Notes under the pieces: generated by a model | Seen by the model: the letters and a program-made list of their open reading frames with translations, nothing else | What the model was told of the DNA's origin: nothing | Database searches by the model: none | Shown: piece by piece, positions 990-63,114 of the stretch | Layout: each line of letters starts with the position of its first letter | How positions within the stretch are numbered: position 1 is the first letter of the stretch | Program-made: the position numbers and the translations under genes | From: Scyliorhinus canicula | Lineage: Eukaryota | Assembly (NCBI RefSeq): GCF_902713615.1 | Contig: NW_024055891.1 | Location: 1 to 64,000, forward strand | Length of the DNA stretch: 64,000 nt | Direction: 5' to 3'

Positions 990-1696
990 CTGCACAATGC
1001 ACGTGGTGAACCCTTTGGTGTCTCAGCAGAGTGGACAAGGTAGTGAATCCCTTTGCACACTTGGAGCAGACAAATGGCCTCTCTCCTCTGTGAACTCGCT
1101 GTTGGGCCAGTAGGTTAGATGACAGTGAATCCCTTCCCACGATCAGAGCAGGTGAACGGCCTCTCCCCAGTGTAAATTCTCTGGTGTGAAAACAGGTCGG
1201 TTGACTGAGCGAATCCCTTCGCACGATTGGAGCAGGTAAACGGCCTCTCCCTGGTGCGAATTCGCTGGTGTACAGCGAGTTAAGACGATCACTTGAATCC
1301 CATCACACAGCGAGAGCACCTGAACGGTCTCTCATCATTGTGAACACGTTGATGAGACTTCAGTTCCCCAGAACATTTATAGCACTTCCTGCAGTCTGGG
1401 CATTTAAACGGTCTCTCATCAGTGTGAACTCGCTGGTGTCTCAGCAGATCAGGTGACTGAGTGAATCCCTTCCCGCATGTATAGCAGGTGAACAGCCTCT
1501 CACCAGTGTGACAACGCCAGTGCTTTACAGGTCAGAAGGGATCATGAATCCCTTCCCACAATCCACACATTTCCTTGGCTTCTCCCCGTTGTGACAGCAT
1601 TTATGTTCTGACAGGTCAGATGATTGGCTGAATCCTTGTAGACACAAAGAACACGTGTATGACTTTTCCCCACTGAACAACGCGCTTTCCTTCCAT
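990..1696 (-). pseudogene. C2H2 zinc-finger pseudogene ZNF-1 (MEGK subfamily)
   Basis: Minus strand starts ATGGAAGGAAAG like the gene at 12743 and continues as HTGERPF-type finger repeats. It has a 2-bp deletion just after the start, a further frameshift near 1120 and Cys>Arg changes (CSDR, CSNR). No long ORF. Confidence 0.85.
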
Positions 1697-2561
1697 GTTC
1701 AAAATCCGATGATATTCAGGATTCAATAAATTAGCCGACTCCATCAGATCCTGATGAGTTGTTTAGTTTGAGTTTCCCAACTGCAAATGCTCCCTTCTAA
1801 TGCCCTGTGAAACTAATTACAAACAGAAAAATAGGGAGTGAGAGAGAACCCGTTAGAACACAAAGGCAGGTTGTGAAATTGAGCTGAATGAATCTGGTCA
1901 TTTGTGGGGCCGACACTAGGAGAAAGTGACCATGAAAGTCACTGGAGTATGATGCAGCAACATAGCACAGTGGTTAGCACAGTTGTTTCACAGGCTTGGG
2001 ACAAATGACCTCCTTCTGCACTGTAAATTCTATGATTCTAAGCTCACTGGGGAGACAGGTTTGGTGATGTCATTCATCTAATACTGTGGGGACATGGGTT
2101 CAAGTGTCACCAAGGCAGCTGGTGGAAGTTGAATTTAACGAATAAATCAGGAATATAATGTGTGCGGCATGGTGATTGGCACTGCTGCCTCACAGTGCCA
2201 GGGACATGGGTTTGATTCCAACCTCGGGTGACTGGGTGGAGTTTGTACATTCTGCTGTGTCTGTGTGGGTTGACTCCGGGTGCTGCGGTCACCATCCACA
2301 GTCCAAAGAAGGGCAATGATCATATCATTGATTTCCTCTGGTATTCATCACCCACCCAAATCGACTCCACATTCTTGGGGCCTGGATCGTCCCTCAGAAC
2401 TGTACTTATTTCCTCCCTTATTAGCAGAACTACCCTACCACCTATTCCTTCCTGCCTGTTCGTCCCAAAAGTCAAATGATCCTGAACACCTATGTCCCCA
2501 TTTGAATAGATACTCACCACTTCCTACTTATCAATCAGCAGGTTCTCAGAGTACTACCCTA

Positions 2562-3235
2562 CGATGCTGACAGCAGGACACTTCCCAGTCTGCTTCGCTG
2601 CAATGCTGACAACAGTACATTCTTCACCATCTGCTTCACTCCGATGCTGACAGCAGGACACTCTTCCTAGTCTGCTTCACTCCGATACTGACAGCAGGAC
2701 ACTCTTCCCAGTCTGCGTCACTGTGATGCTGACAGCAGGACACTCTTCCCAGTCTGCTTCATTGTGATGCTGACATCAGGACACTCTTCCCAGTCTGCTT
2801 CACTCCGATATTGACAGCAAAACACTCTTCCCAGTCTGCTTCACTGTGATGCTGACAGCAGGACACTCTTCCCAATCTGCTTCACTGCGATGCTGACAGG
2901 ACACTCTTCCCAGTCTGCTTCACTGCAATGCTGACAGCAGGACACTTCCCAGTCTGCTTCACTGCTACGCTGACAGCAGGACACTCTTCCCAGTCTGCTT
3001 CACTGCTACGCTGACAGCAGGATTATCTACCCAGTCTGCTTCACTGCTACGCTGACAGCAGGACAGTCTTCCCAGTCTGCTTCACTGCTACGCTGACAGC
3101 AGGATACTCTTCCCAGTCTGCTTCACTGCTACGCTGACATCAGGACACTCTTCCCAGTCTGCATCACTGCTACGCTGACAGCAGGACACTCTTCCCAGTC
3201 TGCTTCACTGCTACACTGACAGCAGGACACACTTC
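2562..3235. repeat. 41-bp minisatellite, ~16 copies
   Basis: Unit GCTGACAGCAGGACACTCTTCCCAGTCTGCTTCACTGCTAC; starts at 2646, 2687, 2728, 2769 etc. Confidence 0.95.
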
Positions 3236-3589
3236 TGTAACCGTCTCACTGTGATACACCCTGATTGCGATACACCCTAATGAATTGAGTGACTCAGTCA
3301 GGTCCTGCATGTGATGGTTGCTTTGAGTGTCCCGTCGGCAAGTCCTTCCCATTTAATATCCTATAAAAAGGACTTTACTAAAAAAAGCCATCACTGTGTC
3401 CAGGATAGGAATTGAGAGACATTTTTCTTGTCTGTTGCAAATCCTTCCCTCTTAATCCTGAAGTTTCTAAACACTCCGTGCAAACTGAGCGTGGGATTTT
3501 GTAATTCAGGTTTGCAGTCCTACACCGAGTGTTTGACAATCCCTCCCAACCACTCTCCTGCACTCGGCCCGTTTCTCCGGTGGACTTTC

Positions 3590-3990
3590 AACCTGGCCGC
3601 CTTCTTCCTGATCCGGAAATCGCACTGCGCATGCTTCACCTAGCTCCGCCCCTTATTACTCCAATTGGTTGGAGGACCAGCCGCTCCCGACCTCCATCAC
3701 CTATTGGTCCGAGGCGGATGTCAATCATTGTGCTGGAGCATGCGCAGCCGAAAGATTCTGACCAGGAGCCAGCTGCTTTTTAACGGCGGAGTGCAGATCC
3801 AGAGGCGAAAATAAACCCGTGAATCGAGATAGAACCGATGGGGAGGTAAAAGAGACTGAATAAATTAATTAAATGGACACTGAATCCTGAATAAGCTCTC
3901 GGTCCCGCGATTGCTCGGTGCTGAGACTTTTCTCCAGCACAGGCCTGATTTAACGGCCGCCATCTTTTTGCGGGGCAATGACCTTCCATC
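3590..3990. promoter_or_regulatory. CpG-rich putative bidirectional promoter P1 (ZNF-1 / ZNF-2)
   Basis: ETS-like CCGGAAAT 3613, NRF1-like TGCGCATGC 3626 and GCATGCGCA 3738, GC box, CCAAT boxes, YY1 CGGCCGCCATCTT 3954; lies between divergent genes. Confidence 0.75.
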
Positions 3991-4135
3991 AGGGCCGATG
4001 GGAATCTGAAACTTTACATGTTACGTTCATCCGGATTGATGCAAAAATACCAAATTTAAAAGCGAATAACAATTACTAATATAGGAGGAAAAGGTGTAAA
4101 TTGGTCAGACACTCAGTTCTGATTGGGCAGGACTT

Positions 4136-4486
4136 TAGAACATAGAACAATACAGCACAGAACAGGCCCTTCGGCCCTCGATGTTGTGCCGAGCAATGAT
4201 CACCCTACTGAAGCCAACGTATCCACCCTATACCAGTAACCCAACAACCCCCCCCCCCCCCCCATTAACCTTATTCTTTAGGACACTAAGGGCAATTTAG
4301 CATAGCCAATCCACCTAACCCGCACATCTTTGGACTGTGGGAGGAAACCGGAGCACCCGGAGGAAACCCACGCGCACACGGGGAGGATGTGCAGACTCCG
4401 CACAGACAGTGACCCAGCCGGGAATCGAACCTGGGACCCTGGAGCTGTGAAGCATTTATGCTAACCACCATGCTACCGTGCTGCCC
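4136..4486 (-). mobile_element. HE1-like V-SINE with CR1-derived tail (type A)
   Basis: tRNA-like head (TGGTTAGC A box, GGTTCGATTCC B box), V-core GTGGGTTTCCTCCGGGTGCTCCGGTTTCCTCCCACA, tail GGGCCGAAGGGCCTGT..(TGTTCTA)n. Confidence 0.9.
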
Positions 4487-5187
4487 TGGCGAATGCAGCA
4501 GGGAGCTATCATCTCCTATGGAGTTGTTTAGGTCCAGAAGAGGCCCCTTTCCTAGACACATTCCATTTTCCGAGTATGAATATATGGACCTTCTCGCAAG
4601 TGTTAGTGGAACACTTTACGAGCCCGACTGAGAATCTTCAAAATTTGGTATTCCTGTGTCTGTCGCGATGTGTATCAGATATAAAAGGTTTTGACACAAC
4701 GTCCTTTTAGCAATACTCCAGTGTCTTAAAGGATGAGAAAGTAGGAGACAGAGAGAGAGATGGAAAGAGAGAATTTCAGAGTTTGAGGATGAGAGATCAG
4801 AAGGCATGGTCACTAATGGTGGAACAATGAAAAAGCGAATTAGAGAAGCGCAGATATCTCGGAGGGTTGTAGAGATGGGTGATGAAGCCGTGGAGAGATG
4901 TGAACACAATGAGGAGAATTTTAATCTAAAGGCATTTAGAGTGAGAAAGAGATGAAAAATTGTTCCATAGAAACTGGAATTCTATATTTTTATTTTTGGG
5001 TGATGACTTTTGCAAACTCTTTTTGCAGATAATTAGAAAAAGAGGATTTGCAGATGGGAAACTTGAATCAAATATCATATAAAGATCCAGCACAGTCACT
5101 CGATTCATCAGGACCTGAATATCTTCTGGCTTTGAATTGGAAGGAAATGTTCATCTGTTCTGTCTGTGGGAAAAGACCTCAAACAAA

Positions 5188-5416
5188 ATGTGACTGGAAA
5201 AGCATTGAGACACACACACCCGAGTGAGAGTGTTCCAGTGAACTGACCGTGGAAACATCAGTGTGACTGGAAAAGCAGCGAGACCCACACAACACACACC
5301 CGAGTGAGAGTGTTCCAGTGAACTGACTGTGGAAACATCAGTGTGACTGGAAAAGCACCGAGACCCACACAACGCACACTCAACTGAGAGAGTTCCAGTG
5401 AACTGACTGTGGAAAG
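5188..5416 (+). repeat. Triplicated ~75-80-bp relic-finger unit in the ZNF-2 leader
   Basis: GTGACTGGAAAAGC...GTTCCAGTGAACTGAC.GTGGAAA occurs three times. Confidence 0.85.
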
Positions 5417-5540
5417 AGCTTTAACCAGTTACATAGTCTGAAAAAAACACACCATTACAGTGGGAAGAGATTTTACAAGTGTGTGTGCACGAAGACTTAA
5501 CTGATCATTCAACCTGGAAAAACACAAGGACACCCGCACA

Positions 5541-6299
5541 ATGGAGAAACCCTGGAAATGTGAGGACTGTGGGAAAGGATTCAGTTGCCCAGCCCTGCTG
5601 GAAATTCATCGACGCAGTCACACTGGGGAGAGACCATTCACCTGCTCCGAGTGTGGAAAGGGATTCACTCAGTCATCCCAACTGCTAACACACCAACGGT
5701 TTCACACTGGGGAGAAACCGTTCACCTGTTCTGAGTGTGGGAAGGGATTCACTCAGTTATCTGACCTGCGGAGACACCAGCTAGTTCATACTGGGGAGAC
5801 TCGTTTCAGCTGCTCCGAGTGTGGGAAGGAATTCATTCAGTCATCCAATCTGCTGAGACACCAGCAAGTTCACACTGGGGAGAGACCGTTCACCTGTCCT
5901 GTATGTGGAAAAGCATTCATTGGGTCCTCTGACCTGCTAAGTCACCAGCGGATTCACAGTGAGGAGAGGCTGTTCAGCTGTACATCCTGTGGAAAGAGAT
6001 TCCGGACTTCAGCCCACCTCAGTGTACACCAGCGAGTTCACACTGGGGAGAAGCCGTTCATCTGCTCTGAGTGTAGGAAGCAATTTGCTCAGTTATCTCA
6101 CCTACAGACACACCAGCGAATACACACTGGGGAGAGACCATTCACCTGCTCTGAGTGTGGCAACAAATTCACTTGTTCATCCCACTTGAGGAGACACCAG
6201 CGAGTTCACACAGGGAACAGGCCATTTACCTGCTCCACGTGTGGGAAGATATTCACTCAGTCTGGCAGCCTGCTGAGACACCAGCGAGTTCACAAGTGA
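5541..6299 (+). CDS. C2H2 zinc-finger protein ZNF-2, 9 fingers, no effector domain seen
   Basis: 252-aa ORF MEKPWKCEDC...HQRVHK with 9 CxxC-x12-HxxxH units and TGE(R/K)PF linkers. Confidence 0.92.
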   Translation: MEKPWKCEDCGKGFSCPALLEIHRRSHTGERPFTCSECGKGFTQSSQLLTHQRFHTGEKPFTCSECGKGFTQLSDLRRHQLVHTGETRFSCSECGKEFIQSSNLLRHQQVHTGERPFTCPVCGKAFIGSSDLLSHQRIHSEERLFSCTSCGKRFRTSAHLSVHQRVHTGEKPFICSECRKQFAQLSHLQTHQRIHTGERPFTCSECGNKFTCSSHLRRHQRVHTGNRPFTCSTCGKIFTQSGSLLRHQRVHK

Positions 6300-11873: not shown

Positions 11874-12743
11874 TTACTCGTGAACTTGCTTGTGTCTCAG
11901 CAAGTTGGATATCCGAATGAATCCCTTCCCACACTTAGAGCAGGTGAATGGCCTCTCCCCAGTGTGAACTCGCTGATGCATAGTGAGTTCAGATGATCGT
12001 CTGAACCCATTCCCGCAGTGAGAGCACCTGAACGGTCTCTCGTCAGTGTGAATACGTTGATGGAATACCAGATCCCAGGTCCTTTTGTAGCACTTCCCGC
12101 AATCTGGACATTTAAAAGGTCTCTCATCAGTGTGAACTCGCTGATGGGACATCAGTTCCCCAGAACCTTTAAAGCCCTTCCCACAGTTCTGACATTTAAA
12201 TGGTCTCTTGTCTGTGTGAACTTGTTGGTGTCTCAACAGGTTGGATGAATCAGTGAATCCTTTTCCACACTCGGCGCAGGTGAATGTCTTCTCCCAAGTG
12301 TGAACCCGCTGGTGTTTCAATAGGTTGGATAAATCATTGAATCCTTTCCCACATGTGGAGCAGGTGAATGGCCTCTCCCCAGTGTGAACTCGCTGATGTC
12401 TCAGCAGGCTAGATAAATGAGCAAATTCCCTCCCACACTCGGAGCAGTTGAATGGTTTATCCCAAGTGTGAATTCTCTGGTGTGCCAGCAGGTTGGATGA
12501 CTGAGTGAATCCCTTACCACATGTGGAGCAGGTGAATGGTCTCTCCCCGGTGTGAGTGCATCGATGAATTTTCAGCTCAGACGGGGAACGAAATGCCTCC
12601 TCGCAGTCCCCACATTTCCACCGTTTCTTCCCAGTGTGAATGTGTTTGTGTCTCCTCAAGCCTGACGATTGACTGAAGCCTTGTCCACACACAGAACACG
12701 TGTACGGTTTCTCCCCAGTATGATCAGTGCTTTTCCCTTCCAT
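11874..12743 (-). CDS. C2H2 zinc-finger protein ZNF-3, 10 fingers (MEGK subfamily)
   Basis: ORF 11874..12749, first ATG at 12743 ([14 protein letters not shown]); 10 intact fingers. Confidence 0.92.
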
Positions 12744-13023
12744 GTTCAAACTCGATGATATTCAGGGCAGGATAAATTGGACAACTGTCAGCTCCCGATG
12801 TGGTTTGAGTTTCCTGACTGCAAATCCTCCCCGTCTAATGCCCTGTGAAATTGATTTAAAACAGAAAAACAGTGAGAGAGAACCCACAAAAATCACAAAG
12901 GCAGCTTGTGGAATTGAGCTGAATGAATCTGGTCATTTATGGGGCCGGCACTGGGAAAAAGTGACCATGAAAACTGCTGGATTTTTGTAAAAATCCAACT
13001 GATTCACTGATATCCTTCAGTGA

Positions 13024-17560: not shown

Positions 17561-18349
17561 CAAGATCGATGGGTTTTTAATCAGTTGGGGAATGAAGGGT
17601 TACAGAGAGAAGGCAGGAAAGTGGACTCAGTGAGTGGTTGATCTATGATCTTAGTAAATGGCAGAGCAGACTCAAAGGGCTGAATGTCATACCCCTCTTC
17701 CTATTTCTTATGGTCTTGTGGAGATTGAGGGGAAATTGATAGAAGTGCACAAGATTGTTAGGTTTAGATAAGGGTGTTCAACAAATGCTGTTCCTATCCG
17801 CTGATTGTAAAAGATTACATGACACAGATTTAATATTTTGAGCAATATCTACATGGGGGAATGTGAGGAAGAAGTTTTACTCAGTGTGGGGTAATAACTT
17901 GAACTCAATGCTTACACTCAAAGGGAGATAATATTCAGCTCCTGATAAATCGAACGATGCAGTCAGACTGAGATGTGAGATTTGGTTTGAATTTCCTGTC
18001 TGCAAATCATCTTCCAATATCCTGTAAAATACATTTACAAAAGCCATCACTGTCAGTCCAAAAATGAAATTCAGAAGAGACAAATATTTCTCTTGGTTGG
18101 AGTTTTCTATGTGTAAATCCTCCCCTTGTAATCCCCTGTAAAAGGAGTTTCCAAAATCCATCTCTGTCAGTCTGGGATAGAAATTCACTACATTCTCTCC
18201 TCCTGCTGCCAATGCATGCTCCCTGCTGCACTTGGCCCCTTGTCATTATCATCAGCAGACCCTTGATTCAAGGATGATATCTCCTCAGGGTAGTGTTTTT
18301 CTGCTATGGATCTCCATGTGACTGAACTGTGACTGCAGATCTTTGCACA

Positions 18350-18735
18350 CACCACTTATTGCTGGCCCGCTATCCAGCCCCATCGCTCCACGCCAGCCAC
18401 ACAGTATAAATTTGACCCTATTTCCAATTCTCTAGCTTTGACAAAGGGTCATCCAGACTCAACATTAGCTCCCTTCTCTCTCCACAGATGCTGTCAGACA
18501 TGAAAATGAAGTAATGAAAATCGCTTATTGTCATGAGTAGGCTTCAAATCAAGTTACTGTGAAAAGCCCCTAGTCGCCACATTCCAGCACCTGTTCGGGG
18601 AGGCTGTTACGGGAATCGAACCGTGCTGCTGGCCTGCTTTCAAAGCCAGTGATTTAGCCCTGTGCTAAACATCCCCGACATGACAAGATTGTTCAGTATT
18701 TTCTGTTTTTGTTTCAGATTCCAGCATCCGAATAA
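18350..18735 (+). mobile_element. Older Penelope-like terminal repeat of a second family, interrupted by a SINE
   Basis: Degenerate hammerhead-like TTTGACAAAGGGTC-ATCCA-GACTC-AACATTAGCT at ~18437-18470, then CTCTCCACAGATGCTG...GTTTCAGATTCCAGCATC, as I recall from fish and shark Penelope ends. Confidence 0.5.
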
Positions 18736-18843
18736 GATGCCTTTAACTCCATGAGGTAGTTCAATCTGGACAGCAGGATTTGCTTCCTCTTCCTTCTGCA
18801 TTTTCCTCAACAATAAGACATTGGGACTAAAGGCTAATACTGT

Positions 18844-19493
18844 GGGCGCGATTCTCCGCTCCCCACACGCCGGGTGGGAGAATCACGGGAGAGCCGCTGT
18901 GGCAACCCCCCGCGACTCTCCCACCCCCCCCCCCCCCCCCAAATGGCGTGTCGCGTTTTGCGACATGCCGCTCGGAGAATCGCCGCTCGCCGTTTTTCCC
19001 GGCGATTCTTCGGCCCGGATGGGCTTAGCGGCCTGACGACCCTGATGGGTTCACGCCGGCGGCAATCACACCTGGTCGCTGCCGGCGTGAACAGCGTGCG
19101 ACAGGTCAGTGTGGGGCCTGTGGGGGGCGGAGAGGGGATCGAGCACCGTGGACGTGTTCAGGAGAGGACTGGCCCGCTATCAGTGCCCGCAGGCGCCGGC
19201 GTCTGTAAACGCCTCACTCTTTCCCCTCTGCCGGCCCGCAAGATCAAGCCACCACATCTTGCGGGGCAGCGGAGGGGAAGACGGCAACCGCGCGTGTGCG
19301 GCTGATGTCACTTAGGCGCCGCCGGCCGCGTCATTCTCGGCGCGCCGCTTTGAGGCAAGCGTCAAGGCCCGGCGGCCGAGTTTCCCGCAACGCCACTCCT
19401 AGCCCCCCTGGGGGAGAGGGAATAGGGGGAGAGGAGCAGCCTCCGACACTCCGGGTTTCACTCCGGCGTCGGCCGTTGCGGAGAATTTCGCCC
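18844..19493. mobile_element. GC-rich MITE / non-autonomous DNA transposon (PIF/Harbinger-like)
   Basis: 16-bp TIRs GGGCGCGATTCTCCGC / GCGGAGAATTTCGCCC (14/16 match), 3-bp TSD TGT, internal GGAGAAT repeats, CpGs retained. Confidence 0.8.
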
Positions 19494-19529
19494 TGTGTCT
19501 CCATTCTGAACAATGGGTAACAAGCTCCT

Positions 19530-46211: not shown

Positions 46212-46805
46212 TCACTTATGAACTCTCCGGTGTCTCAGCAGATTGGATAACTGAGTGAATCCCTTCCCACACACTGAGCAAGTGAATGGCTTCTCCCCAG
46301 TGTGAACAAGTTGGTGTCTCTGTAGGGCAGATGGATCGCTGAATCCTTTCCTACATTCGGGGCAGGTGAATGGCCTCTCCCCGGTGTGAACGCGTTGGTG
46401 AACAACCAGGTTGCAAGACTGACTGAATCCCCTCCCACATGCAGAGCAGGTGAATGGCCTCTCCCCGGTGTGAACTCGCTGGTGTGTCTGCAGGTGTGAT
46501 GAATTCCTGAATCCCTTCCCACAGTCAGAGCACGTGAATGGCCTCTCCCCAGTGTGAACTCGCTGGTGTGTCAGCAGGTGTGATGAATCCCTGAATCCCT
46601 TCCCACACTCAGAGCAGGTGAACGGCCTCTCCTTGGTATGCACATGCTGATGTTTCCGCAGGGTGGATGAATCACTGAATCCCTTTACACAGACAGAGCA
46701 GGTAAATGGTCTCTCTCCAGTGTGAATGCGTCGATGGGTTTCAAGAGCAGACGGGAACAGAAATCCCTTCCCACAGTCCCTACATTTCCACAGTTTCTCC
46801 ATCAT
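46212..46805 (-). CDS. C2H2 zinc-finger protein ZNF-7, 7 fingers
   Basis: ORF 46212..46838, ATG at 46805 ([11 protein letters not shown]); 7 fingers. Confidence 0.9.
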
Positions 46806-48189
46806 GTGGGGGTCCTTGTGTCTCTCCAGGTTTGACAATCAGCATTGCCCACACATGGAACATGTGTATGGTTTCTCCTCGCTGTGAATGGTGTGATGTT
46901 TCTTCAGGCTGTGTAACTGGTTAAAGTTCTTTCCACAGTCCATTCACTGGAACACTCTCGCTCGAGCGTGTGTGTGTGTCTCGGTGCTTTTCCAGTCACT
47001 GGTGATTAAAATCTTTTGACACAGAAATATTTCACACTCTAGATTCAAAGTCTGATGATATTCAGCTCCCAATGAATCGATTGGCTGTGCTAGATCACGG
47101 CATGACATTTGTTTTGGGATTTGTGATTGAAAATATCTTCCCTTTTAATATCCTATAAAAATAGATTTTCAAAAGTCATCAGTCCAAGTCCAGGATAGAA
47201 ACTCAGAACAGATAATTCTAGTTTCTATGGAAAATTCTTTCCTCTCTTGTTCCCCAAAAGTTGTAAATCACCGTCTCACACACTCTCTGTTCATTCTCAC
47301 TCTGCTGTGCCTGATATACACACTTCCAATTCTCAAGGTGCCATTTATCTAGATCCATGCTCACTACTTCCTTTTCAGCACACAGGGATCGGAAAATCTT
47401 CATGCAAGTAGTTGGTCTAAATTTATAAGTGTATTTTAGTGGGCTCAAGAATGTGTGAGATATTACTTCATTAGATACACAGAGGTGGTTTGATGAAGAC
47501 ATTTATTTTGGCAGTGAGTGATCATTATATGGAACTCACCGTGTCCAAGAATGGCGGAAGAGGAGATCATCAAAAATTCCAAAATGGATATTTAAGGAAA
47601 TAAACCTAGAGGAATGGGGATATAGAGGGGGAATCGGACTGATTTGATTCTCTGCACAGAGTCAGCATGGACTCGAGGTGCTGAATGGACTCCTTCTCCA
47701 CTGTAATGACTGACTGGAAATATGTAACGTAGCTTCGGTACTGTCTGACAGAAGAGAAATAATTATAAATAAACTTTACTGCACAGCCATAAATAATATA
47801 TTTAATATGTACATTACAAGAACTAGATATATTAATGCTCTACAATCTCCATAGGGGCTAATAACCTGAAAATAAACACATTTCCAGAGATCCCCAACTG
47901 TCCAAGAATTTGCAGGTTACGTGGATTGGGCATGTGGAAATTGCCTCTTGGTGTGTAAAGATGCGCATGTAAGGTGGTTTGGTCATGTTACAATTAGCCC
48001 TTGGTGTCCAAGGATATTCAGGTTAACTGAGGTTACAGGGATAAGGCCTAAGTAGGGTACTCTTTCAGAGGGTCAGTGCAGACTCGATAGGTCGAATGGC
48101 CTCCATCTCCACTGTTGGACTTCCATGGATTAAATTGCAGGATAATGTTTTATTTATTTTTTAAATTCAAATAAATAATAAACTTCATC

Positions 48190-49157: not shown

Positions 49158-49549
49158 GGGGGTTTTCACAGTAACTTCATTTGAAGCCTACTCGTGACAA
49201 TAAGCGATTTTCATTTCATTTCATTTTCATTTCATGGACAGGATAAATTTGACTTTAAATATCTCAGACAATAAAAACAGGTTCCACAAAATGACAGCAT
49301 TTCCCCCTCAGCAGATTTGACTCTAATTCCAGTTCCAGACTCCCACAACTCTCTGTATTTCCCAGAGGGAGAATGAAAGTATTTTACTCACAGATGTTGA
49401 ACAGAGGATGACGTTTTAGCCTGTGTGTGAAGCTAAAAACCAATGCTATGCTGTTTCAAATCAAACTGCAGGACTGGGAAGAAAATGATGGGAAGACATT
49501 TCATATCAAACTGCAGGACTGGGAAGAAAATGATGGGAAGACATTTTGC

Positions 49550-50200
49550 AAAGTCCCCTCCCCCACTCTCTGAGCTGTCGGCCCAGCGCGCAAGCGCAGA
49601 ACGCGCTGCTGTCCGGAGCAGGCGCAGTGCTCCCGATGTCGTTTTGGACCAGCAGCCGCTGTGGAGCTAGGGTGGGTCAGTGAGCGGCTGCTCGCTCTGA
49701 CCGGCAGTCTGGAAACCTTCTTTCCTGGTGGTGTTGGGGGAAAGGGGGGGACAAAGGGTGGAGATAGGGCTACCGTGGCCGCGCGCCAGTGGACGTCATC
49801 GCGGAGCAGAGTGATTTCTATTGGGCGACTCGGGCAGAGTCCTTTGTGACGTTAAAACTCCTCAGAGGGACGTTCCCAGCACACCGTGGTCCATTGGTTC
49901 CAGAAGCTGAATACTGCGGATTGGACAACAGCTCAACACCCGTCTGGAGGTCAAAGTGTCTCCCACCCCCACGTGAGCTCTGGATTTGCTTTCCCATTAT
50001 CTTCATGTAAGGGATTGACCAATGGGAGGAGCTGGATGAACGGAAGCACTCTGAACACCCAGCCAATCAGAACGCGGGCTTTGTGCCAATGGCTGCAGCT
50101 TCCTGGATTGTGTGAATATGGGATTTGTGAAGTTGCTCATTACAGACCAGCAAAGCTGCTGCTCCATCATGAATGAAGATTGGGATTCACACAGACTAAA
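49550..50200. promoter_or_regulatory. Putative bidirectional promoter P5 (ZNF-7 / ZNF-8)
   Basis: CpG cluster with NRF1-like GCGCAAGCGCA, CRE-like GACGTCA and multiple CCAAT/ATTGG boxes between divergent genes. Confidence 0.72.
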
Positions 50201-50668
50201 ACCTCCTCCCGTGTGTAAAATTTGTGAGTAAAATTTTCCCTTCTCCCCATTTTTATTTATTTTCCAATTCTAGGCTTCAATTGTTGACTTGCATGGACTG
50301 GAGGGAAAGGAAGTGAATCCAGGGAGTGTGCAGACTACAGAAAGGTTGGCCCAGGTCTCTTCCTCTCTTAAACACATTAACTTCCTTTTCTCCCTCACAT
50401 TGGCACATTTATTTGTCTGGCTAAAAATGTGGTCTCTTTCCTAATATTCATAATTAAAAGGCGGATTTCCCCTTGAGATGGCTGACATTTAAGGGGACAA
50501 TGAATTAATATGGGACAGAGATATTCTGGTGTTACGTGGTACATATTTGATATATTATTTATGGTTTTGTCTCAATCATTTATTTCCACTTTTAAATTAT
50601 AGTACTGAATGTCTTTATAGTCCTCACGATACAGAGATCAAACAGCAACTCCAGTCTTTATTCACAGA

Positions 50669-50990: not shown

Positions 50991-51710
50991 TCTTTGAGCC
51001 ACCCAGTCACTTGCATTTCCCCTATACTACTGTACCCGTGCAAGTTTATTTCCTTCAAGTATCCATCAAATTTCATGTGGAAACATAGGTAGAGATGCAG
51101 ATTAAAACCACTCACTGTCTAAATAGTATTCTTTCACATATCCTCTGCCACCATAGCATTAATTAATTAAGAAATTGAGTCTAGCATATTACACATTTTC
51201 AAACAGTTACATGGACACATAATTATATATATTCCAGGAGACTGCGTAGAGTAGAAACTGTTGAGCAGTATGAATCAGTCCTTCACGAGAATTGTTTGGT
51301 TGAATATTAGGTACAGCACAGAGAGAATGGAGAGTGTGTGTCTGGGTTGATCTTTGAGAAATGATAGATGAAAGAAGGATTCACAGAAACTGGAATTTGT
51401 GATTTTTTATTTCTATCTTGTACTGATAGAAATGACTTTTGTGTTCTCCTTTTACAGGATTATAGAAGGGGAGAATTGGCAGACAGAAATCTCAAAAGGA
51501 TTTTAAACATCAGTGTGACTGGAAAAGTATGAGACACACACAGGCCTGAGTGAGAGTGTTCCAGTGAACTGACAGTGGAACAAGCTTTAACCAGAAACAC
51601 CACTTGCATAAGCATTCCTCCATTCACAGTGGGGGGAAACCATACATTCGGTTTGTGTGTAGGCGAGGCTTCAACTGATCAACCTGGAGAGAGCCAAGGA
51701 CACCCGCACC

Positions 51711-52860
51711 ATGGAAAAACTGTGGAAATGCCGTGACTGTGAGAAGGGATTCAGATCCCCATCACACTGGGGAGAGGACATTCACCTGCTCGGAGTGTGG
51801 GAAGAGATTCACTAATTCATCCAACTTATCGAAACACAAACGAGTTCACACCAGTAAGAGACCGTTCACCTGTTCTGACAGTGGGAAGGGATTCAAATCT
51901 CGATCAGAGCTAGAGATTCATCAACGCAGTCACACTGGAGAGAGGCCAATTGCCTGCTCCGAGTGTGGTAAGGGATTCGCTCATTCATCCAATCTCCTGC
52001 CACACAAGCGCGTTCACACTGGGGAGAAGCCATTCTCCTGCACTGTGTGTGGGAAGGCATTCAGCGATTCATCCACCCTGCGGAAACACCACCGAGTTCA
52101 CACTGGGGAGAGGCCATTCACCTGCTCTCAGTGTGGGAAGGGATTCACTCGATCATCCAACCTGGTGGCTCACCAGCAAGTTCACACTGGGGAGAGTCTG
52201 TTCACTTGCTCCGAGTGTGGGAAGGGATTCAGCAATTTATTCAACTTGCTGATACACCAGCGAGTTCGCACTGGGGAGAGGCAGTTTACTTGCACCGTCT
52301 GTGGGAAGAGATTCACTCATTCTTCCTCCGTACGGACATACCAGCGAGCTCACACCGGGGAGAGGCCATTCACTTGCACTCTGTGTGGGAAACGATTCAC
52401 TCAGTCAGCCAGCCTGCTGGCACACCATGTCACTCACACCAATGAGAGACTTTCAAATGCTCGACCTGCGAGAGTTGCTTCAAAATAGCTGCTGATCTGA
52501 GGGTCCACCAGCGCATTCATGCTGAGGAGAGACCATTTAGCTGCTCTTACTGCGTAAAGACATTTAGAACGTCATCCAGTCTTCGGACACACCAACAAAT
52601 TCACACTGGGGAGAGGCCGTACAACTGCTCTCAGTGTGGGAAGTGATTTAATGATTCATCCACCCTGTTGACTCACCAGCGAGTTCACACAGGGGAGAGG
52701 CCATTCACCTGCTCTGTGTGGGAAGGGATTCACTCGATCATCCCACCTGCTGGCACACCAGCACATTCACACTGGGGAGAGGCTGTTCAGCTGCCCTGTG
52801 TGTGGGAAGGGATTCATTCAGCCATTTCACCTGATGACACAACACCGAGTTCACAAGTAA
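51711..52860 (+). pseudogene. C2H2 zinc-finger pseudogene ZNF-8
   Basis: ACCATGGAAAAA start at 51711, deletion in finger 1, 1-bp frameshift near 52450, in-frame TGA near 52644 and another frameshift near 52720. Several fingers lack Cys or His. Confidence 0.85.
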
Positions 52861-54000
52861 TTACTTGGGTTCTGCTATTTTTGCTGCTGTTTTATCACAT
52901 CCAGGACTGAACCATGTTCATTCTGACAGTTGAGTGGGAGGATCAGAGGGTTTCTTTCAGCTGGACTGGCTGGTCTCACCTCTCTGCTTCCAGTGGGCCG
53001 ATGTTTATTGAGCCTGACAGAGCACATTTCCATGGAAATGGCCCACAAAAGTTAATGAAGGACATTTATTTTATCCTGGATAGTAAATAATAATATATTT
53101 TTTTTGTTTTGCAACCATTGCAGGTAGCTAGAAAATAAATACTTTGTCTGTTGCATTGAGTCTACAGCACAGGGCCAGGCCGGTCAGATCAATTGGACTG
53201 TCAGTATTTATGTTCCACATGAGTCTCCACCCGCCCCTCTACATCTCCCCCATCAGCATTTCCCTCTATTCCTTTCTCCCTCATATATGTATCTAGCTTT
53301 ACGTTCAATGTATTCATGCTGTTCACCTCAACCACTCGCTGTGGGAGTGAGTTCCACATTCTCACCACCCGCTGGGTAGAGGTTTCTACTGACATTCCTA
53401 TTGGATTATTGAACGCCTGCATAATCTTAAAGACTTGCATCAGGTCACACTTCAGTCTTTTTTTTTTTAAAAGAAAAGCAGCCCCTGCCTTTCCCGAGAG
53501 GTAAATGCTCTCAGTTTTTCTAATACAGGATGATGTAGATGGGCTGGTCGGTTGCGCAGATCTGTGGGAAATGAAATTTAAGCCAGAAAAGTGTGGGCTG
53601 ATGCCTGTACTCATTAAAGATTACGGTGTTCACTACTTACCTGTCAATAACAGAAGATTGAATAAGTAGTGATCCTTAATTCTAATGGTAATTAATGAAT
53701 CAATAATCAATGAGTAGTTATATACCAAGACTGAATTTTACTTGCTGTAAAATGTAAAACTTTAGTTACTGTTTATGGAAAGAATGTGCAATGAAGATAA
53801 AGATGGAATCATATCGAGCACAGAGGAAGATGATGGTCATTGTTGAGGTCAGTCAGAGATCTTTAGGTTATTGTCCGAGGCCCAACCGTCTTTAACAGGT
53901 TCATCAACAACCTTCCTCCATCATAAGGTCAGGATTACTGATGTTCAGCACCATTCATCACTCCTCAGATACTGAAGCAGTCCATGTTCAAATGCAGTAA

Positions 54001-59813: not shown

Positions 59814-59814
59814 A

Positions 59815-60750
59815 TCATTTATGACGTCGCTGGTGTCTCAGCAGGTGGGATGAATCAATGAATCCTTTCTCACAGTCGGAGCAGGTGAATAGCCTCTCCC
59901 CACTGTGAACTTGCTGGTGTTTCAGGAGGCTGGATAACTGAGTGAATCCTTTCCCACACTGAGAACAGGTGAATGGCCTCTCTCCAGTGTGAACTCGCTG
60001 ATGTTTCAGGAGGCTGGATAACTGAGTGAATCCTTTCCCACACTGAGAACAGGTGAATGGCCTCTCTCCAGTGTGAATGCGCCGGTGTCTCTGCAGGTTG
60101 GATGAAGTCGTAAATTTTTTCCCACAGTCGGAGCAGGTGAATGGCCTCTCCCCGGTGTGAATGCGCCGGTGAGTCAGCAGACTGGATGAATCACTGAATC
60201 TCTTCCCACAGGTGGAGCATGTGAATGGCTTCTCGCTGGTGTGAAGACGCTGGTGCGTCTTAAGGCTGGATGACTGATTGAATCCCTTGCCACACTTGGA
60301 GCAGGTAAAGGGCCTCTCCCCAGTGTGAACTCTCTGGTGCACCAGCAGGCTGGATGAGTCGCTGTATCTCTTCCCACAATTGGAGCAGATAAAGGGCCTC
60401 TCCCCAGTGTGAACACGCTGGTGTAGGTACCAGCAGGGCAGATGAATCAATGTATCCCTTCCCACACATGGAGCAGATGAATGGCCTCTCCCCAGTGTGA
60501 ACCTTCTGATGGGTTACCAGGTTGGATGACTGAGCGAATCCCTTCCCACACTCTGAGCAGGTGAATGGTCTCTCCCCAGTGTGAACGCGTTTGTGTGTTT
60601 GCAGATGGGATGACTGAGTGAATCCCCTCCCACACTTAGAGCAGGTGAAAGGCCTCTCCCCAGTGTGAATATGTAGATGAGCTTCCAGTCCAGATGGGAA
60701 ATGGAAGCTCTTCCCACATTCCCCACATTTCCACGGTTTCTCTGTGGTGC
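59815..60750 (-). pseudogene. C2H2 zinc-finger probable pseudogene ZNF-9 (about 11 fingers)
   Basis: The family start ACCATGGAGAAA reads ACCACAGAGAAA here, and a 4-bp insertion near 60427 splits the array into two frames. A Penelope insertion abuts the stop codon. Confidence 0.8.
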
Positions 60751-61649
60751 CGGTTTTCTTGTGTCTCTCCAGGTTAGCTGGTCGACCAGTTCCAATTGTT
60801 GGGTTTCAAACCGCTGTGAATGGTGTGATGTTTTTTCAAGCTGTGTAACAGTCAGTGCCCTGGAACACTCTCACTCGGGTGTCTGTCTCGGTGCTTTCCA
60901 GTCACATTGATGGTTAAAATGCTTTGAAGCAGACAGAACAATCATTTTCCTTCTAGGTTCAAAAGCGGATGAAATTCAGGTCCCGATGAATCGAGTGGCT
61001 CTGTCAGATCTGGACATGCTGTTTCATTGGAGATTTCTGACTGCAAATCCTCCACTTCTGATATCCTGTAAAGGGAGTTTACAAATCATCACTGTCAGTA
61101 TGGGAGAGAAATTCAAAACAGACAATTTCAGTTGCTGTGGGACATTCTTTCCCCTCTCCTTCCACAAAAGCTGTAAATCTCCATCCCTTCACTCTCACTC
61201 TGCTGTATCTAACAAACACCCTCCCAATTACCCTCCTGAATGTATCAATTCATCCAGTATTATATTACAGAATAGAAAGAATTCTAAATGGCCAGACAAT
61301 GTAATGAAGCAAAGGAGAAGGTTTTTATTTACCGTAACAATCAAACTAAAAACATAAATGAATCATTTATTAACAAATAGTATTTGAATGGACAGGATAA
61401 ATTTGACTTTAAATATCTCAGACAATAAAAACAGGTTGCACAAAATCTCAGCATTTCCCCCTCAGCAGATTTGTCTCTAGTTCCAGATTCTCACAACTCT
61501 CTGTATTTCCCAAAGGGAGAAAGAGTTTTACTTACAGATGTTGGATAGAAGAGGAAGTTTTGAAGTCTGTGTGCGAAGCTAAAAACCAATGCTGGGCTGT
61601 TGATAATCAAACGGAAGGACTGTGAAGAAAATGATGGGAAGACATTTTG

Positions 61650-61880
61650 CAAAGTCCCCTCCCCCACTCCCTCAGCTGTAGGCCCAGCGCGCAAGCGCAG
61701 AAAGAGTTGAGCTCCTTTTTGGACCAGCCAGCCGCCGTCGTGAGAGGCGGGGGAGGGGAGTTCACCAAGTGGTTTCTCGCTCTGACCGGAGCCGGTTGCC
61801 GTCATCGCGGAGAACAGTGATTCCTATTGGGTGATCTCGGCAGGGTACCATTGTAACGTCACAATAGGGAAGTTGGACAG
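61650..61880. promoter_or_regulatory. Putative promoter P6 upstream of ZNF-9, paralog of P5
   Basis: 61388-61865 aligns by eye with 49233-49855, including GGCCCAGCGCGCAAGCGCAGAA and CGTCATCGCGGAG. Confidence 0.7.
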
Positions 61881-63114
61881 TGCAACATCTGGGAGGAAAT
61901 CAATGTCTCCCCCTTTCCATTTCTCTGCCCATTCTGGGGGAATTGTTCACTTGCAGGAACTGAAGAGGAAGGAAGTGAATCCAGGAAGGGGACAGACTCT
62001 GAAAAGGTGACAGACGAACATCGGAATTAGGAGCGGAGTAGGCCGAGGTATCTCGTAGATACATTAACATCCTTTAACTCCCTCAGTTTGACACATTATT
62101 TGTCTGGCTGACAGGAATGTTCACAATTAAAGGGATCGTTTTCCAAGTAGATGAATGAGTTTGAAATGAATAGTAAAGTAATACAGTACAGATGGTTAAA
62201 TGGTACATATTGTATTATTTATGATTTCTAAAGTTCATTATAATTATTTATTGTCTTGAAATATATCGCAGTGTAGCTGCATTGTATTTCCAGTTTTAGA
62301 GACATAACAGCACAGCAGGTACACGAGTCCTGCTAACTCTACAGCAATCCAATCAGTCCCATTCCCCCTTTATATCTGTGTTCAGCTGAATAGAATAGAA
62401 TTGAATCCCAACAGTGCAGAAGCAGGCCATTTGGCCCTTCAACTCTGCGGCAACCCTTGGAAAGAGCATCCTACTTAACCCCACACCTCCACCCAACCAC
62501 CGTAACCCCACCTAACCTTTTGGACATTTAGGGGCAATTTAACATAGACAATGTACCTAACCTGCACATCTTTGGACTATGGGAGGAAACCAGAGCACCC
62601 AGAGGAAACCCACACAGACAAAAGGAGAAAGTGTAAACTCCACACAGACACTCACAAGAATTGAACCTGGGTCCCTGGTGCTGTGAGACACTATTGCTAA
62701 ACACTGTGCCGCCTGAAAGGTTATTTCCTTCAAGCATCTGTCCAATTTCATTTTGAAATCATTGATCATCTCTGCTTCACCCTCATTGACAGTGAATTCC
62801 AGGTATTGACCACTCACTGCCGAAATAAAGTTTTTTCTCGCTGCTCCTATCTCTCTAATCACGTAATAGAGCACTGCATATTGCAACTTTAATAATCCAC
62901 ATGCAAACATACATTTGGGTCATTCAATCCATTATGTCTGTATAGGCTCTCCAAATGAGCATTATGATTTAGTACCAGTCTCCTGTCTTTTCTTTCTCTC
63001 TGAGAAATACAGGGAGTTGTGAAACTCTGTAACTGCATTTACTGCTTGTTCGCTTCCCACACCAAGTGGTGCATTAAGGCAGATTTCCATCTTTTTCTAA
63101 AGCTAGTAATTCCT

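What the first reader, a model, noticed from the sequence alone, without database searches (positions are those of the whole stretch)
990..62300. KRAB-less C2H2 ZNF cluster amplified as head-to-head gene/promoter cassettes in a TE-rich shark locus
Seen: nine finger-only ZNF loci, three divergent pairs around CpG islands (ZNF-1/2, 3/4, 7/8), homologous promoter cores (P1~P2, P2~P4, P5~P6), one third of the copies pseudogenised, and varied helix residues among paralogs. Known: tetrapod KRAB-ZNF and cyprinid FiNZ-ZNF clusters show this birth-and-death pattern and repress TEs, while KRAB-ZNF expansions are not a feature of chondrichthyans. Inference: this may be an independent, poorly described elasmobranch ZNF system, possibly TE-targeting, whose duplication unit is a bidirectional two-gene cassette and which works without an obvious tethered repressor domain.
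Basis: partly seen in the sequence, partly recalled or inferred. Interest (0 to 1): 0.8.

Follow-up and report, generated by a model that had tools for sequence, protein, structure and literature searches.

The report
Old shark fingers-only zinc-finger gene cluster
This repeat-rich stretch of shark-type DNA holds nine copies (six intact, three dead) of an old zinc-finger gene family of sharks and rays that encodes DNA-binding fingers and nothing else; it is a real but fairly ordinary gene cluster, and the idea that it silences jumping genes remains untested.

Summary
The observation mostly holds. There are nine C2H2 finger arrays: six intact ORFs with 7-14 fingers and three pseudogenes.

All copies share one gene plan. 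A conserved 3' splice acceptor is followed by a non-coding leader with in-frame stops, a Kozak ATG, then fingers to the stop codon. The coding sequence is therefore fingers only. No KRAB, SCAN or SET-like sequence occurs in the window. RefSeq models from basking shark, sawshark and bamboo shark start at the same ATGs.

There are two classes, A (Z1, Z3, Z6) and B (Z2, Z4, Z5, Z7-Z9).

The cassette idea is only partly right:
- The Z7/Z8 intergenic region is collinear with the region upstream of Z9, so one head-to-head unit was copied.
- Four of the six CpG islands carry mirror-image arms.
- The mirror partners of Z2 and Z4 are truncated relics, not Z1 and Z3.
- No mirrored pair has two intact genes.
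- The longest "promoter homologies" are SINE copies. The P1~P2 and P2~P4 matches are 22-44 bp YY1, NRF1 or CCAAT motifs.

The paralogs are old (dS 0.7-1.4). The finger framework is under purifying selection (omega about 0.2-0.3). Contact residues are unconstrained, and positive selection is not shown. TE targeting is untested. Other windows of this genome showed the same family earlier in this scan.

The parts
1003..1804 (-). Z1, a class A pseudogene. Last exon starts at 1804; finger remnants at 1003-1653.
   Evidence: Four recognisable fingers lie in two frames, with a frameshift right after the ATG and a stop in finger 2. The acceptor context is conserved.
1805..1952 (-). Class A conserved non-coding element, about 145 nt, directly 5' of the acceptor (Z1 copy).
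   Evidence: It is 80-97% identical to the Z3 and Z6 copies, while leader and coding regions are 50-70% identical. It shows no RNA-structure signal and no Rfam match.
3276..3470 (-). Truncated relic (acceptor plus start of leader) that mirrors Z2 across CpG island 1.
   Evidence: Leader motif hit at 3435-3449. It aligns to the leaders. Inverted repeat 3276-3294 / 5094-5112. No fingers follow it.
3401..4000 (.). CpG island 1, between the relic/Z1 and Z2.
   Evidence: GC 0.51, CpG o/e 0.80. It carries NRF1-like, CCAAT and YY1-like (3956-3966) motifs shared with islands 2 and 6.
4135..4486 (-).
   Evidence: It is 95% identical to 26048-26401 and 91% to 48866-49150. There are 22 copies or fragments in the window.
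5029..6299 (+). Z2, class B, intact. 512-nt leader; CDS 5541-6299 (252 aa, 9 fingers).
   Evidence: Acceptor ctttttgcag|AT, 8 in-frame stops and 3 uATGs in the leader, ATG context ACAATGG. The leader contains an 80-bp x2.5 tandem duplication.
11874..12842 (-). Z3, class A, intact. 99-nt leader; CDS 11874-12743 (289 aa, 10 fingers).
   Evidence: Acceptor tttcacag|GG, one in-frame stop 6 codons before the ATG, no uATG. The start MEGKS... matches Cetorhinus RefSeq models.
12843..12990 (-). Class A conserved element (Z3 copy).
17919..18170 (-). Truncated relic, two tandem partial copies of acceptor plus leader start, that mirrors Z4 across CpG island 2.
   Evidence: Inverted-repeat arms against 20397-20530 are 77-85% complementary, closer than Z4 is to any other class B leader. 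No finger remnants follow it.
18601..20200 (.). CpG island 2, 1.6 kb, the largest in the window.
   Evidence: GC 0.59, o/e 0.86, 118 CpG. It carries YY1-like (19602-19612), CCAAT (19845-19888) and NRF1-like (19957-19972) motifs.
20433..22007 (+). Z4, class B, intact. 342-nt leader; CDS 20775-22007 (410 aa, 14 fingers).
   Evidence: The array shows a 336-bp (4-finger) higher-order period.
30311..31832 (-). Z5, class B, ORF intact. 340-nt leader; CDS 30311-31492 (393 aa, 13 fingers).
   Evidence: The first (anchor) finger has lost both cysteines. Fingers 8 and 9 are 94% identical.
32270..32659 (-). Z5 upstream block, with candidate exon 1 ending at 32510 (donor AAATCT|GTGAGT) and a CCAAT promoter.
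   Evidence: It is collinear with the Z8 upstream region 50499-49988. It overlaps CpG island 32501-32900.
37047..38368 (-). Z6, class A, intact. 107-nt leader; CDS 37047-38261 (404 aa, 14 fingers).
   Evidence: The block 35206-38551 is homologous to the Z3 block 8225-12972.
38369..38516 (-). Class A conserved element (Z6 copy).
39401..39900 (.). CpG island 6, upstream of Z6, with no mirrored arms.
   Evidence: It has two exact YY1-like motifs at 39511-39521 and 39584-39594. No inverted repeats were found.
46212..47152 (-). Z7, class B, intact. 347-nt leader; CDS 46212-46805 (197 aa, 7 fingers).
   Evidence: There are 6 uATGs in the leader. Fingers 3 and 4 are 94% identical.
49234..50234 (.). 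Z7/Z8 mirrored promoter island. Candidate Z7 exon 1 ends at 49392 (-); candidate Z8 exon 1 ends at 50223 (+), 831 bp apart.
   Evidence: Mirror arms 49381-49427 / 50188-50234 are 81% complementary and both end in GTGAGT. CpG island 49401-50100. The region is collinear with 61388-62109.
51458..52925 (+). Z8, a class B pseudogene.
   Evidence: It has a 26-nt deletion in the anchor finger, lost Cys and His ligands, a frameshift near 52440-52458 and an in-frame stop.
59815..61065 (-). Z9, a class B pseudogene with about 11 finger units.
   Evidence: The start codon is ACA instead of ATG. There is a frameshift between 60387 and 60497. A 127-bp element sits directly at the stop codon.
61388..62109 (.). 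Z9 promoter island, a copy of the Z7/Z8 island. Candidate Z9 exon 1 ends at 61536 (donor CATCT|GTAAGT). The mirrored donor at 61891 reads GG instead of GT.
   Evidence: CpG island 61501-62100. Collinearity continues to 62758, so a Z8-like partner is expected beyond the SINEs or the end of the window.

Best explanation
The window is a piece of an old cluster of 'fingers-only' C2H2 zinc-finger genes that, in my sample, is found in sharks and rays.

Gene plan. Each gene appears to have a short non-coding first exon at a small CpG-island promoter carrying NRF1-, CCAAT-, GC-box- and in some cases YY1-like motifs. It then has one large last exon. That exon opens at a conserved splice acceptor and carries a non-coding leader. 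A start codon in good Kozak context follows, then 7-14 fingers run to the stop codon. No effector domain is encoded.

Two classes.
- Class A (Z1, Z3, Z6) has a leader of about 100 nt. The protein starts MEGKS/MEENG, followed by a first finger (lost in Z6) and then a nearly constant 'anchor' finger.
- Class B (Z2, Z4, Z5, Z7-Z9) is a derivative. Its first three fingers decayed into a 340-512-nt leader with shared TGA stops and several uORFs. A new ATG in the linker just before the anchor finger is used (MEKPWKC).

Growth and decay. The cluster grew long ago by segmental duplication of single genes and of inverted, promoter-sharing pairs. It still changes through duplication of fingers inside arrays. 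It decays through frameshifts, stops, truncation and TE insertion.

Function (inferred). The proteins are most likely sequence-specific DNA-binding factors. Their framework is under purifying selection and their base-contacting residues vary freely. How they act without an effector domain is not shown. They may work by occupancy alone, or by recruiting partners through the constant anchor finger.
For: - Nine arrays are present.
- The acceptor and leader are conserved in all nine copies.
- All six intact genes have in-frame stops between the acceptor and the ATG, and A or G at -3 with G at +4.
- Pfam finds only zinc-finger families.
- tblastn with the non-finger N-termini of 224 vertebrate ZNFs (KRAB, SCAN and SET types) finds nothing outside the arrays and leaders, apart from TE-derived parts of chimeric gene models.
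- RefSeq models of other elasmobranchs start at the same ATGs. P0163 and P0178 (Cetorhinus) match class A. P0133 (Pristiophorus) and P0218 (Chiloscyllium) match class B.
- The anchor-finger signature occurs in 11 of 234 fetched proteins. Nine are named elasmobranch proteins, one is an unnamed EukProt entry, and one is a weak crocodile match.
- Framework omega is 0.19-0.30 and contact-site omega 0.3-1.5, with dS 0.7-1.4.
- The leader tree is star-like.
- Cassette collinearity is shown, and mirror arms.
- Young duplications inside arrays reach 94% identity, and 4- and 5-finger periods are visible.
Against: - No transcript evidence is available. The exon 1 donors, the use of the acceptor and the use of the ATG are inferred from conservation alone.
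- Class B leaders carry 3-6 upstream ATGs, which should dampen translation.
- None of the six predicted proteins is in the protein collection as an exact sequence, so this genome's own annotation neither supports nor contradicts the models.
- The class A genes have an unexplained 145-nt conserved element where the intron end should be. It could instead be a promoter.
- Finger orthology between paralogs is uncertain and dS is near saturation, so the omega values are rough.
Confidence: 0.72

Rival explanations
1. The family is the chondrichthyan counterpart of tetrapod KRAB-ZNFs and cyprinid FiNZ-ZNFs. It would be a fast-evolving TE-repressor system in an arms race with local retroelements.
For: - The setting is repeat-rich. 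It holds 22 SINE copies, at least 7 CR1-like LINE tails, an RT ORF and Penelope-like pieces. About half of the non-ZNF sequence is repeated within the window.
- Contact residues are the most variable positions, with omega up to 1.5.
- Fingers are still being duplicated inside arrays.
- About a third of the copies are dead.
- ZNF and retroelement copy numbers correlate across metazoans (PMC10547256).
Against: - The paralogs are old (dS 0.7-1.4, star-like tree), and both classes predate the split of major shark orders.
- Mean contact-site omega is below 1 and cannot be told apart from relaxed constraint.
- There is no effector domain, no binding data and no expression data.
Confidence: 0.2
2. 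A hidden effector domain exists. Upstream coding exons (KRAB-like, FiNZ-like or a new short domain) would be spliced onto the fingers through an acceptor other than the conserved one.
For: - FiNZ is only 28 aa and sits on a separate exon (PMC10547256), so short domains are easy to miss.
- One S. torazame model (P0132) joins a 230-aa acidic N-terminus in frame to the leader.
Against: - In-frame stops follow the conserved acceptor in all six intact genes.
- No pyrimidine-rich AG site lies between the last stop and the ATG.
- The N-terminus of P0132 has no homologue among 5.8 billion proteins, so it is a one-off model.
- Four RefSeq models in other species start at the same ATGs.
- The conserved upstream blocks contain no conserved ATG.
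Confidence: 0.06
3. The cluster is mostly a graveyard. The 'intact' ORFs would be recent survivors of decay and no longer functional genes.
For: - Three of the nine arrays and two further relics are dead.
- Every mirrored pair has a dead side.
- Class B leaders are laden with uORFs.
- Z5 has lost the cysteines of its anchor finger.
Against: - Six ORFs of 197-410 aa have stayed open across dS of about 1.
- Framework omega is 0.19-0.30 in every pairwise comparison.
- All 67 fingers keep Cys2His2, and 66 of 67 keep Leu at +4.
- Kozak contexts are conserved.
- The Z7/Z9 promoter core (86-91% identical) is more conserved than the leader (75%).
Confidence: 0.08

Closest known systems
Tetrapod KRAB-zinc-finger (KZFP) gene clusters
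   Same: Both have tandem clusters of poly-C2H2 genes with the whole finger array in one large last exon. Both have variable helix positions -1, +3 and +6 on a constrained framework, gain and loss of fingers within arrays, many pseudogenes and TE-rich surroundings.
   Different: No KRAB exon is present and no upstream coding exon is possible. KRAB-ZFP/TRIM28 is described for sarcopterygians (PMC11603059). The paralogs here are much older than typical lineage-specific KZFP bursts.
Cyprinid FiNZ-ZNFs (Wells et al. 2023, PMC10547256)
   Same: Both are lineage-restricted expansions of ZNF genes without KRAB in a fish group, organised in clusters.
   Different: FiNZ genes carry a conserved 28-aa N-terminal domain on its own upstream exon. 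Here the exon upstream of the finger exon cannot be coding. TE repression and positive selection were shown experimentally for FiNZ and are not shown here.
Effector-less poly-zinc-finger genes of other vertebrates (for example models named 'gastrula zinc finger protein XlCGF', 'oocyte zinc finger protein XlCOF' and ZFP2/OZF-like)
   Same: They have the same overall protein architecture of fingers and TGEKP-type linkers only. These are the names automatic annotation gives to the shark relatives.
   Different: The shark and ray family has its own signature. This is a near-constant anchor finger (C-x-[DE]-C-[GE]-[KE]-x-[FY]-x-x-P-S-x-L-x-x-H-[RQ]-[RC]-x-H) at or near the N-terminus, together with the MEGKS or MEKPWKC starts.
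Bidirectional CpG-island promoters of head-to-head gene pairs
   Same: Two divergent candidate first exons lie 354-831 bp apart inside one CpG island with NRF1, CCAAT, YY1 and GC-box-like motifs. That such motifs typify bidirectional promoters is from my own knowledge and was not checked here.
   Different: Here the two sides are mirror-image copies of each other, that is, an inverted duplication. In every case at most one side still leads to an intact gene.

Membership tests
Tandem C2H2 (Krueppel-type) poly-zinc-finger genes | At least 5 consecutive C-X2-C-X12-H-X3-H fingers joined by TGEKP-like linkers | tested here: met
   There are 7-14 fingers per intact gene. Pfam zf-C2H2 and zf-H2C2_2 score E 1e-46 to 1e-97.
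KRAB-ZNF | A KRAB domain (PF01352) encoded upstream and spliced in frame to the fingers | tested here: not met
   No KRAB in the six proteins. tblastn with KRAB-bearing N-termini gives no hit outside the arrays, best E 0.05. In-frame stops follow the acceptor in all six genes.
KRAB-ZNF | Recruitment of TRIM28/KAP1 and silencing of TEs | not testable with these tools
   This needs protein interaction and chromatin assays.
FiNZ-ZNF | A conserved 28-aa N-terminal FiNZ domain on a single exon upstream of the finger exon (PMC10547256) | tested here: not met
   An upstream exon cannot contribute coding sequence because stops lie between the acceptor and the ATG.
SCAN-, SET/PRDM- or BTB-ZNF | A SCAN, SET or BTB domain N-terminal to the fingers | tested here: not met
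   SCAN- and SET-bearing N-termini gave no hits. Pfam on all 20 non-ZNF ORFs of at least 120 aa found only RVT_1. BTB was covered only by that ORF scan.
Shark/ray anchor-finger ZNF family (informal; not named in the literature searched) | Start MEGKS...(finger)...anchor finger, or start MEKPWKC directly at the anchor finger, with the anchor signature xPSxLExHRRxH | tested here: met
   Z3 and Z6 (and the remnant of Z1) match P0163 and P0178. Z2, Z4 and Z7 match P0133 and P0218. Nine of the 11 signature hits among 234 fetched proteins are named elasmobranch proteins.
Bidirectional promoter gene pair | Two divergent first exons or TSSs less than 1 kb apart | tested here: inconclusive
   Conserved mirrored donors lie 831 bp apart (Z7/Z8) and 354 bp apart (Z9 and its partner) inside CpG islands. 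No transcription data are available.
TE-driven arms-race ZNF family | Positive selection at DNA-contact residues and preferential binding of TEs | tested here: inconclusive
   Contact-site omega is 0.3-1.5 against 0.2-0.3 for the framework, but dS is near saturation and finger orthology is uncertain. Binding is not testable here.

The most novel reading that the evidence does not exclude
Sharks and rays may run their own ZNF-based genome-defence system, convergent with KRAB-ZNFs and FiNZ-ZNFs. In it, the nearly constant anchor finger that opens every working array would serve as the built-in docking module for a silencing cofactor, in place of a separate effector domain. The variable fingers behind it would track transposable elements.
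Probability: 0.15. Interest if true: 0.7.

Novelty: new member of a known kind. Interest (0 to 1): 0.35.

Why it matters
KRAB-ZNFs (sarcopterygians), KRAB-like ZNFs (ray-finned fish) and FiNZ-ZNFs (cyprinids) are the described vertebrate ZNF families linked to transposon control. None of the papers I searched describes an equivalent for cartilaginous fishes.

This window gives a clean gene model for a family that appears restricted to sharks and rays:
- the acceptor, the leader and the start codon;
- two classes of gene;
- a constant first working finger.

That makes an experimental test practical. It also documents two evolutionary mechanisms in one locus. One is the rescue of an N-terminally decayed array by a start codon recruited from a finger linker. 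The other is promoter sharing created by inverted duplication, in which only one side survives.

If the family turns out to be a plain set of old transcription factors, it is an ordinary cluster.

Tried and rejected
1. Selenocysteine recoding of the shared TGA codons in the class B leader. One of them replaces a zinc-binding Cys codon. Rejected because the relic fingers are frame-shifted differently in Z2, Z5 and Z8, so the stops are inherited damage.

2. Exact-sequence look-ups of the six predicted proteins. None is in the collection, so there is no help with species or annotation. In one search my Z4 start was 9 nt off; this was corrected.

3. The acidic 230-aa N-terminus of S. torazame P0132 as a family effector. 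It has no homologue at all.

4. Resolving the order of duplications from the class B leaders. The tree is star-like and all forks are weak.

5. Rfam. It found no family at gathering score in the window. It found no hammerhead at E <= 0.1 in 53900-59900, although the 127-bp element has a hammerhead-like core by eye.

6. The class A 145-nt conserved element as a structured RNA. The z-scores are -0.8, -0.45 and +0.6, and there is no credible Rfam hit.

7. A search for further decayed finger arrays behind the two relics. None were found.

8. The whole-protein homology search. It was swamped by generic ZNFs, so only the search restricted to the N-terminus was informative.

9. The candidate small 'exon 2' at 50295-50345 / 32440-32390 / 61957-62010. 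It is conserved, but its donor is not kept in Z5, so I do not claim it as an exon.

Full report
WHAT IS THERE

A regular-expression scan of all six frames finds 90 C2H2 finger matches, one of which (48307-48378) is a stray outside any array. The rest group into nine arrays:
- Z1 1003-1653 (-)
- Z2 5559-6293 (+)
- Z3 11880-12698 (-)
- Z4 20793-21947 (+)
- Z5 30320-31390 (-)
- Z6 37062-38216 (-)
- Z7 46218-46784 (-)
- Z8 51787-52688 (+)
- Z9 59821-60727 (-)

Six are single open reading frames of 197-410 aa with 7-14 fingers: Z2, Z3, Z4, Z5, Z6 and Z7. Three are broken:
- Z1 has fingers in two frames, a frameshift just after the ATG and a stop.
- Z8 has a 26-nt deletion in its first finger, lost Cys and His ligands, a frameshift and a stop.
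- Z9 has ACA where the start codon should be, plus a frameshift.

The window has no N runs, no tRNA gene and no Rfam family at gathering score.

GENE MODEL

All nine copies share sequence well upstream of the fingers. Alignments show a conserved polypyrimidine tract and AG...TTTTACAG|GATATTAGAAGGGGAGGATTTGCAG... in class B and ...TTTCACAG|GGCATTAGA.GGGGAGGATTTGCAG... in class A. A leader follows, and then an ATG in good context (A or G at -3 and G at +4; strict ACCATGG only in Z5 and the dead Z8).

In every intact gene the frame of the fingers is closed by 1-8 stop codons between that acceptor and the ATG. No conserved pyrimidine-rich AG lies between the last stop and the ATG. Upstream exons therefore cannot add protein sequence, and the products are fingers only.

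Three further results agree:
- Pfam finds only zinc-finger families in the six proteins.
- tblastn with the non-finger N-termini of 224 vertebrate ZNFs, mostly KRAB with some SCAN and SET, gives nothing significant outside the arrays and leaders. The exceptions are TE-derived parts of chimeric models.
- Of the 20 non-ZNF ORFs of at least 120 aa, the only Pfam hit is a reverse transcriptase.

Independent gene models in other species use the same starts. Cetorhinus P0163 and P0178 begin MEGKS..., as Z3 does. Pristiophorus P0133 and Chiloscyllium P0218 begin [14 protein letters not shown]..., as Z2, Z4 and Z7 do.

TWO CLASSES

Class A (Z1, Z3, Z6) has a leader of about 100 nt with at most one upstream ATG. 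The protein starts MEGKS/MEENG, and polyadenylation signals lie 67-121 nt after the stop codon.

Class B (Z2, Z4, Z5, Z7, Z8, Z9) has a 340-512-nt leader. By alignment to class A it is the decayed remains of the original start and the first three fingers. It carries TGA stops shared between copies, and 3-6 upstream ATGs. The working ATG sits in the linker in front of the next finger.

That next finger is nearly constant: C-x-[DE]-C-[GE]-[KE]-x-[FY]-x-x-P-S-x-L-x-x-H-[RQ]-[RC]-x-H. It is the first finger of class B and the second of class A. Among the 234 proteins fetched, this signature occurs in 11. Nine are named shark or ray proteins, one is an unnamed EukProt entry, and one is a weak crocodile match. 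The best matches to the first 62 residues of Z4 (69-77% identity) are likewise sharks and rays. Both classes occur in several shark orders, so the split between them is ancient.

I considered selenocysteine read-through of the shared TGAs. I rejected it because the relic fingers are out of frame in different ways in different copies.

PROMOTERS AND THE CASSETTE CLAIM

Six CpG islands are not made of SINE sequence: 3401-4000, 18601-20200, 32501-32900, 39401-39900, 49401-50100 and 61501-62100. Each lies just upstream of at least one finger exon.

Three further 'islands' (4301-4700, 26001-26400, 48701-49200) are young copies of a tRNA-derived SINE. It resembles the HE1 SINE of elasmobranchs as I remember it; I made no sequence comparison. 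The window holds 22 copies or fragments, 6.4% of its length. The longest 'promoter homologies', 91-95% over about 300-350 bp, are these SINEs.

Real promoter homology exists between the Z7/Z8 intergenic region and the region upstream of Z9. A collinear chain runs from the 3' flank of Z7/Z9 through 49234-49608 ~ 61388-61709 (86-91%) to 51083 ~ 62758. It includes an old shared SINE. So one head-to-head unit was indeed duplicated. The Z8-like partner of Z9 should lie beyond the young SINEs at 63.1-64 kb or off the window.

Within these islands the two sides are mirror images:
- Arms 49381-49427 and 50188-50234 are 81% complementary, and each ends in a GTGAGT donor.
- This gives candidate first exons ending at 49392 (-) and 50223 (+), 831 bp apart.
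- In the Z9 island the equivalents lie 354 bp apart, and the partner's donor reads GG instead of GT.

Z5 carries only the Z8-type half (32270-32659 ~ 50499-49988; donor at 32510/32509).

For Z2 and Z4 the mirror partners are not Z1 and Z3. They are truncated relics that keep only the acceptor and the first 200 nt or so of leader, at about 3276-3470 (-) and 17919-18170 (-). The second relic is 77-85% complementary to Z4's own leader, closer than any other class B gene is to Z4. No finger remnants follow either relic.

Among four mirrored promoters, none has two intact genes.

They look like YY1 (AAGATGGCGGC), NRF1 (GCGCATGCGC-like) and CCAAT sites. Exact YY1-like motifs occur only in the three islands next to class A genes, but in inconsistent orientation.

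Other duplication blocks are single-gene units:
- Z5 ~ Z8, including 3' flank and promoter.
- The Z3 block 8225-12972 ~ the Z6 block 35206-38551.

The statement 'the duplication unit is a two-gene cassette' is therefore true for one event here. It is not the general rule.

AGE AND SELECTION

Nei-Gojobori estimates on finger units aligned at the best offset give dS 0.7-1.4 between all pairs of genes. Framework omega is 0.19-0.30. Omega at positions -1, 2, 3 and 6 is 0.3-1.5.

Class B leaders differ by 25-33%, and their tree is a star. The duplications are therefore old, and the framework has been under purifying selection, which argues that the intact genes are functional.

Contact positions evolve about as fast as silent sites. 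That fits either relaxed constraint or diversifying selection, and the data cannot separate the two. Entropy is highest at -2, -1, +3, +5 and +6, while +2 is mostly Ser.

Arrays still change internally. Neighbouring fingers are 94% identical in Z5 and Z7, and 4- and 5-finger higher-order periods show in Z4 and Z6. The Z7/Z9 promoter core (86-91%) is better conserved than their leaders (75%), which suggests constraint or gene conversion.

SETTING

Finger exons with their immediate flanks make up about 20% of the window. About half of the remainder has another copy inside the same 64 kb. Identified repeats are:
- the SINE;
- at least seven CR1-like LINE tails;
- an RT ORF at 57955-58791 with an older relative at 15456-16433;
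- three copies of a small element with a hammerhead-like core;
- satellite-like arrays.

'TE-rich' is a fair description.

COMPARISON AND NOVELTY

The cluster behaves like KZFP and FiNZ clusters in its layout and in which residues vary. It fails the defining test of both families because it has no effector exon.

KRAB-ZFP/TRIM28 is described for sarcopterygians, KRAB-like ZNFs for ray-finned fish and FiNZ for cyprinids (PMC11603059, PMC10547256). In six literature searches I found no description of a shark or ray family. Wells et al. 2023 do not mention cartilaginous fishes in their main text.

Effector-less poly-ZNF genes are common in vertebrates, so I class this as a new member of a known kind.

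Earlier notes of this scan on other pieces of the same genome describe the same family, the head-to-head layout and the dead mirror partners. They call the genome a catshark, which I did not verify. My results were obtained independently and agree with them. TE targeting remains a hypothesis.

UNEXPLAINED

Class A genes share a 145-nt non-coding element directly 5' of the acceptor. It is 80-97% identical between copies while the leader and coding regions are 50-70% identical. It has no RNA-structure or Rfam signal. Homology between the class A genes stops at its 5' edge. It may be a compact promoter, which would make class A single-exon genes. Z3 has no CpG island within 5.8 kb.

Noticed in passing
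window 1805-1952, 12843-12990, 38369-38516 (- strand): A 145-nt non-coding element directly 5' of the class A acceptor is far better conserved (80-97%) than the genes' leaders and coding regions (50-70%). It has no structure or Rfam signal. It could be a compact promoter or an unusually constrained intron end.
   Followed up: partly
window 59689-59815, 54002-54128, 13025-13123: A 127-bp element is 100% identical between two sites and 95% identical at a third. It sits right at the Z9 stop codon, flanked by a TCATAAATGA duplication. It has a hammerhead-like core (CTGAAGA, then stem GGAGC/GCTCC, then GAAA), yet Rfam reports no hammerhead at E <= 0.1.
   Followed up: partly
window 4135-4486, 26048-26401, 48866-49150 and 19 more sites: A tRNA-derived SINE of about 350 bp with an internal poly-G run. 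Two copies are 95% identical, so it was recently active. Its CpG-rich young copies pass CpG-island thresholds and mimic promoters.
   Followed up: yes
window 31390-31492 (- strand), Z5: The otherwise constant anchor finger of Z5 has lost both cysteines (PREVEDYGKD...). A second anchor-like finger with Phe changed to Asp follows it. The rest of the 393-aa ORF is intact.
   Followed up: no
window 5212-5415: A Z2-specific tandem duplication (80 bp x 2.5, 94%) of a relic finger inside the non-coding leader. It explains why Z2's leader is longer, at 512 nt.
   Followed up: no
window 2562-3235, 14116-14587, 55220-55356: Three satellite-like arrays: 41 bp x 16.6, 43 bp x 11 and 37 bp x 3.7. The first two lie between a class A gene and the next CpG island.
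   Followed up: no
window 8225-9526 and 35206-36544: A 1.3-kb block downstream of Z3 and of Z6 is 74% identical. It shows that these two class A genes were copied as a block of at least 3.3 kb together with their 3' flank.
   Followed up: partly
window 3956-3966, 19602-19612, 39511-39521, 39584-39594: Exact AAGATGGCGGC (YY1-like) motifs occur only in the three CpG islands next to class A genes. None occurs in the three islands that serve class B genes only. The orientation is not consistent.
   Followed up: partly
protein P0132 (Scyliorhinus torazame): This RefSeq isoform joins a unique acidic, Ser-rich 230-aa N-terminus in frame to the pre-finger 'leader' segment, so that segment can be coding in at least one family member or model. 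The N-terminus has no homologue in the database.
   Followed up: yes
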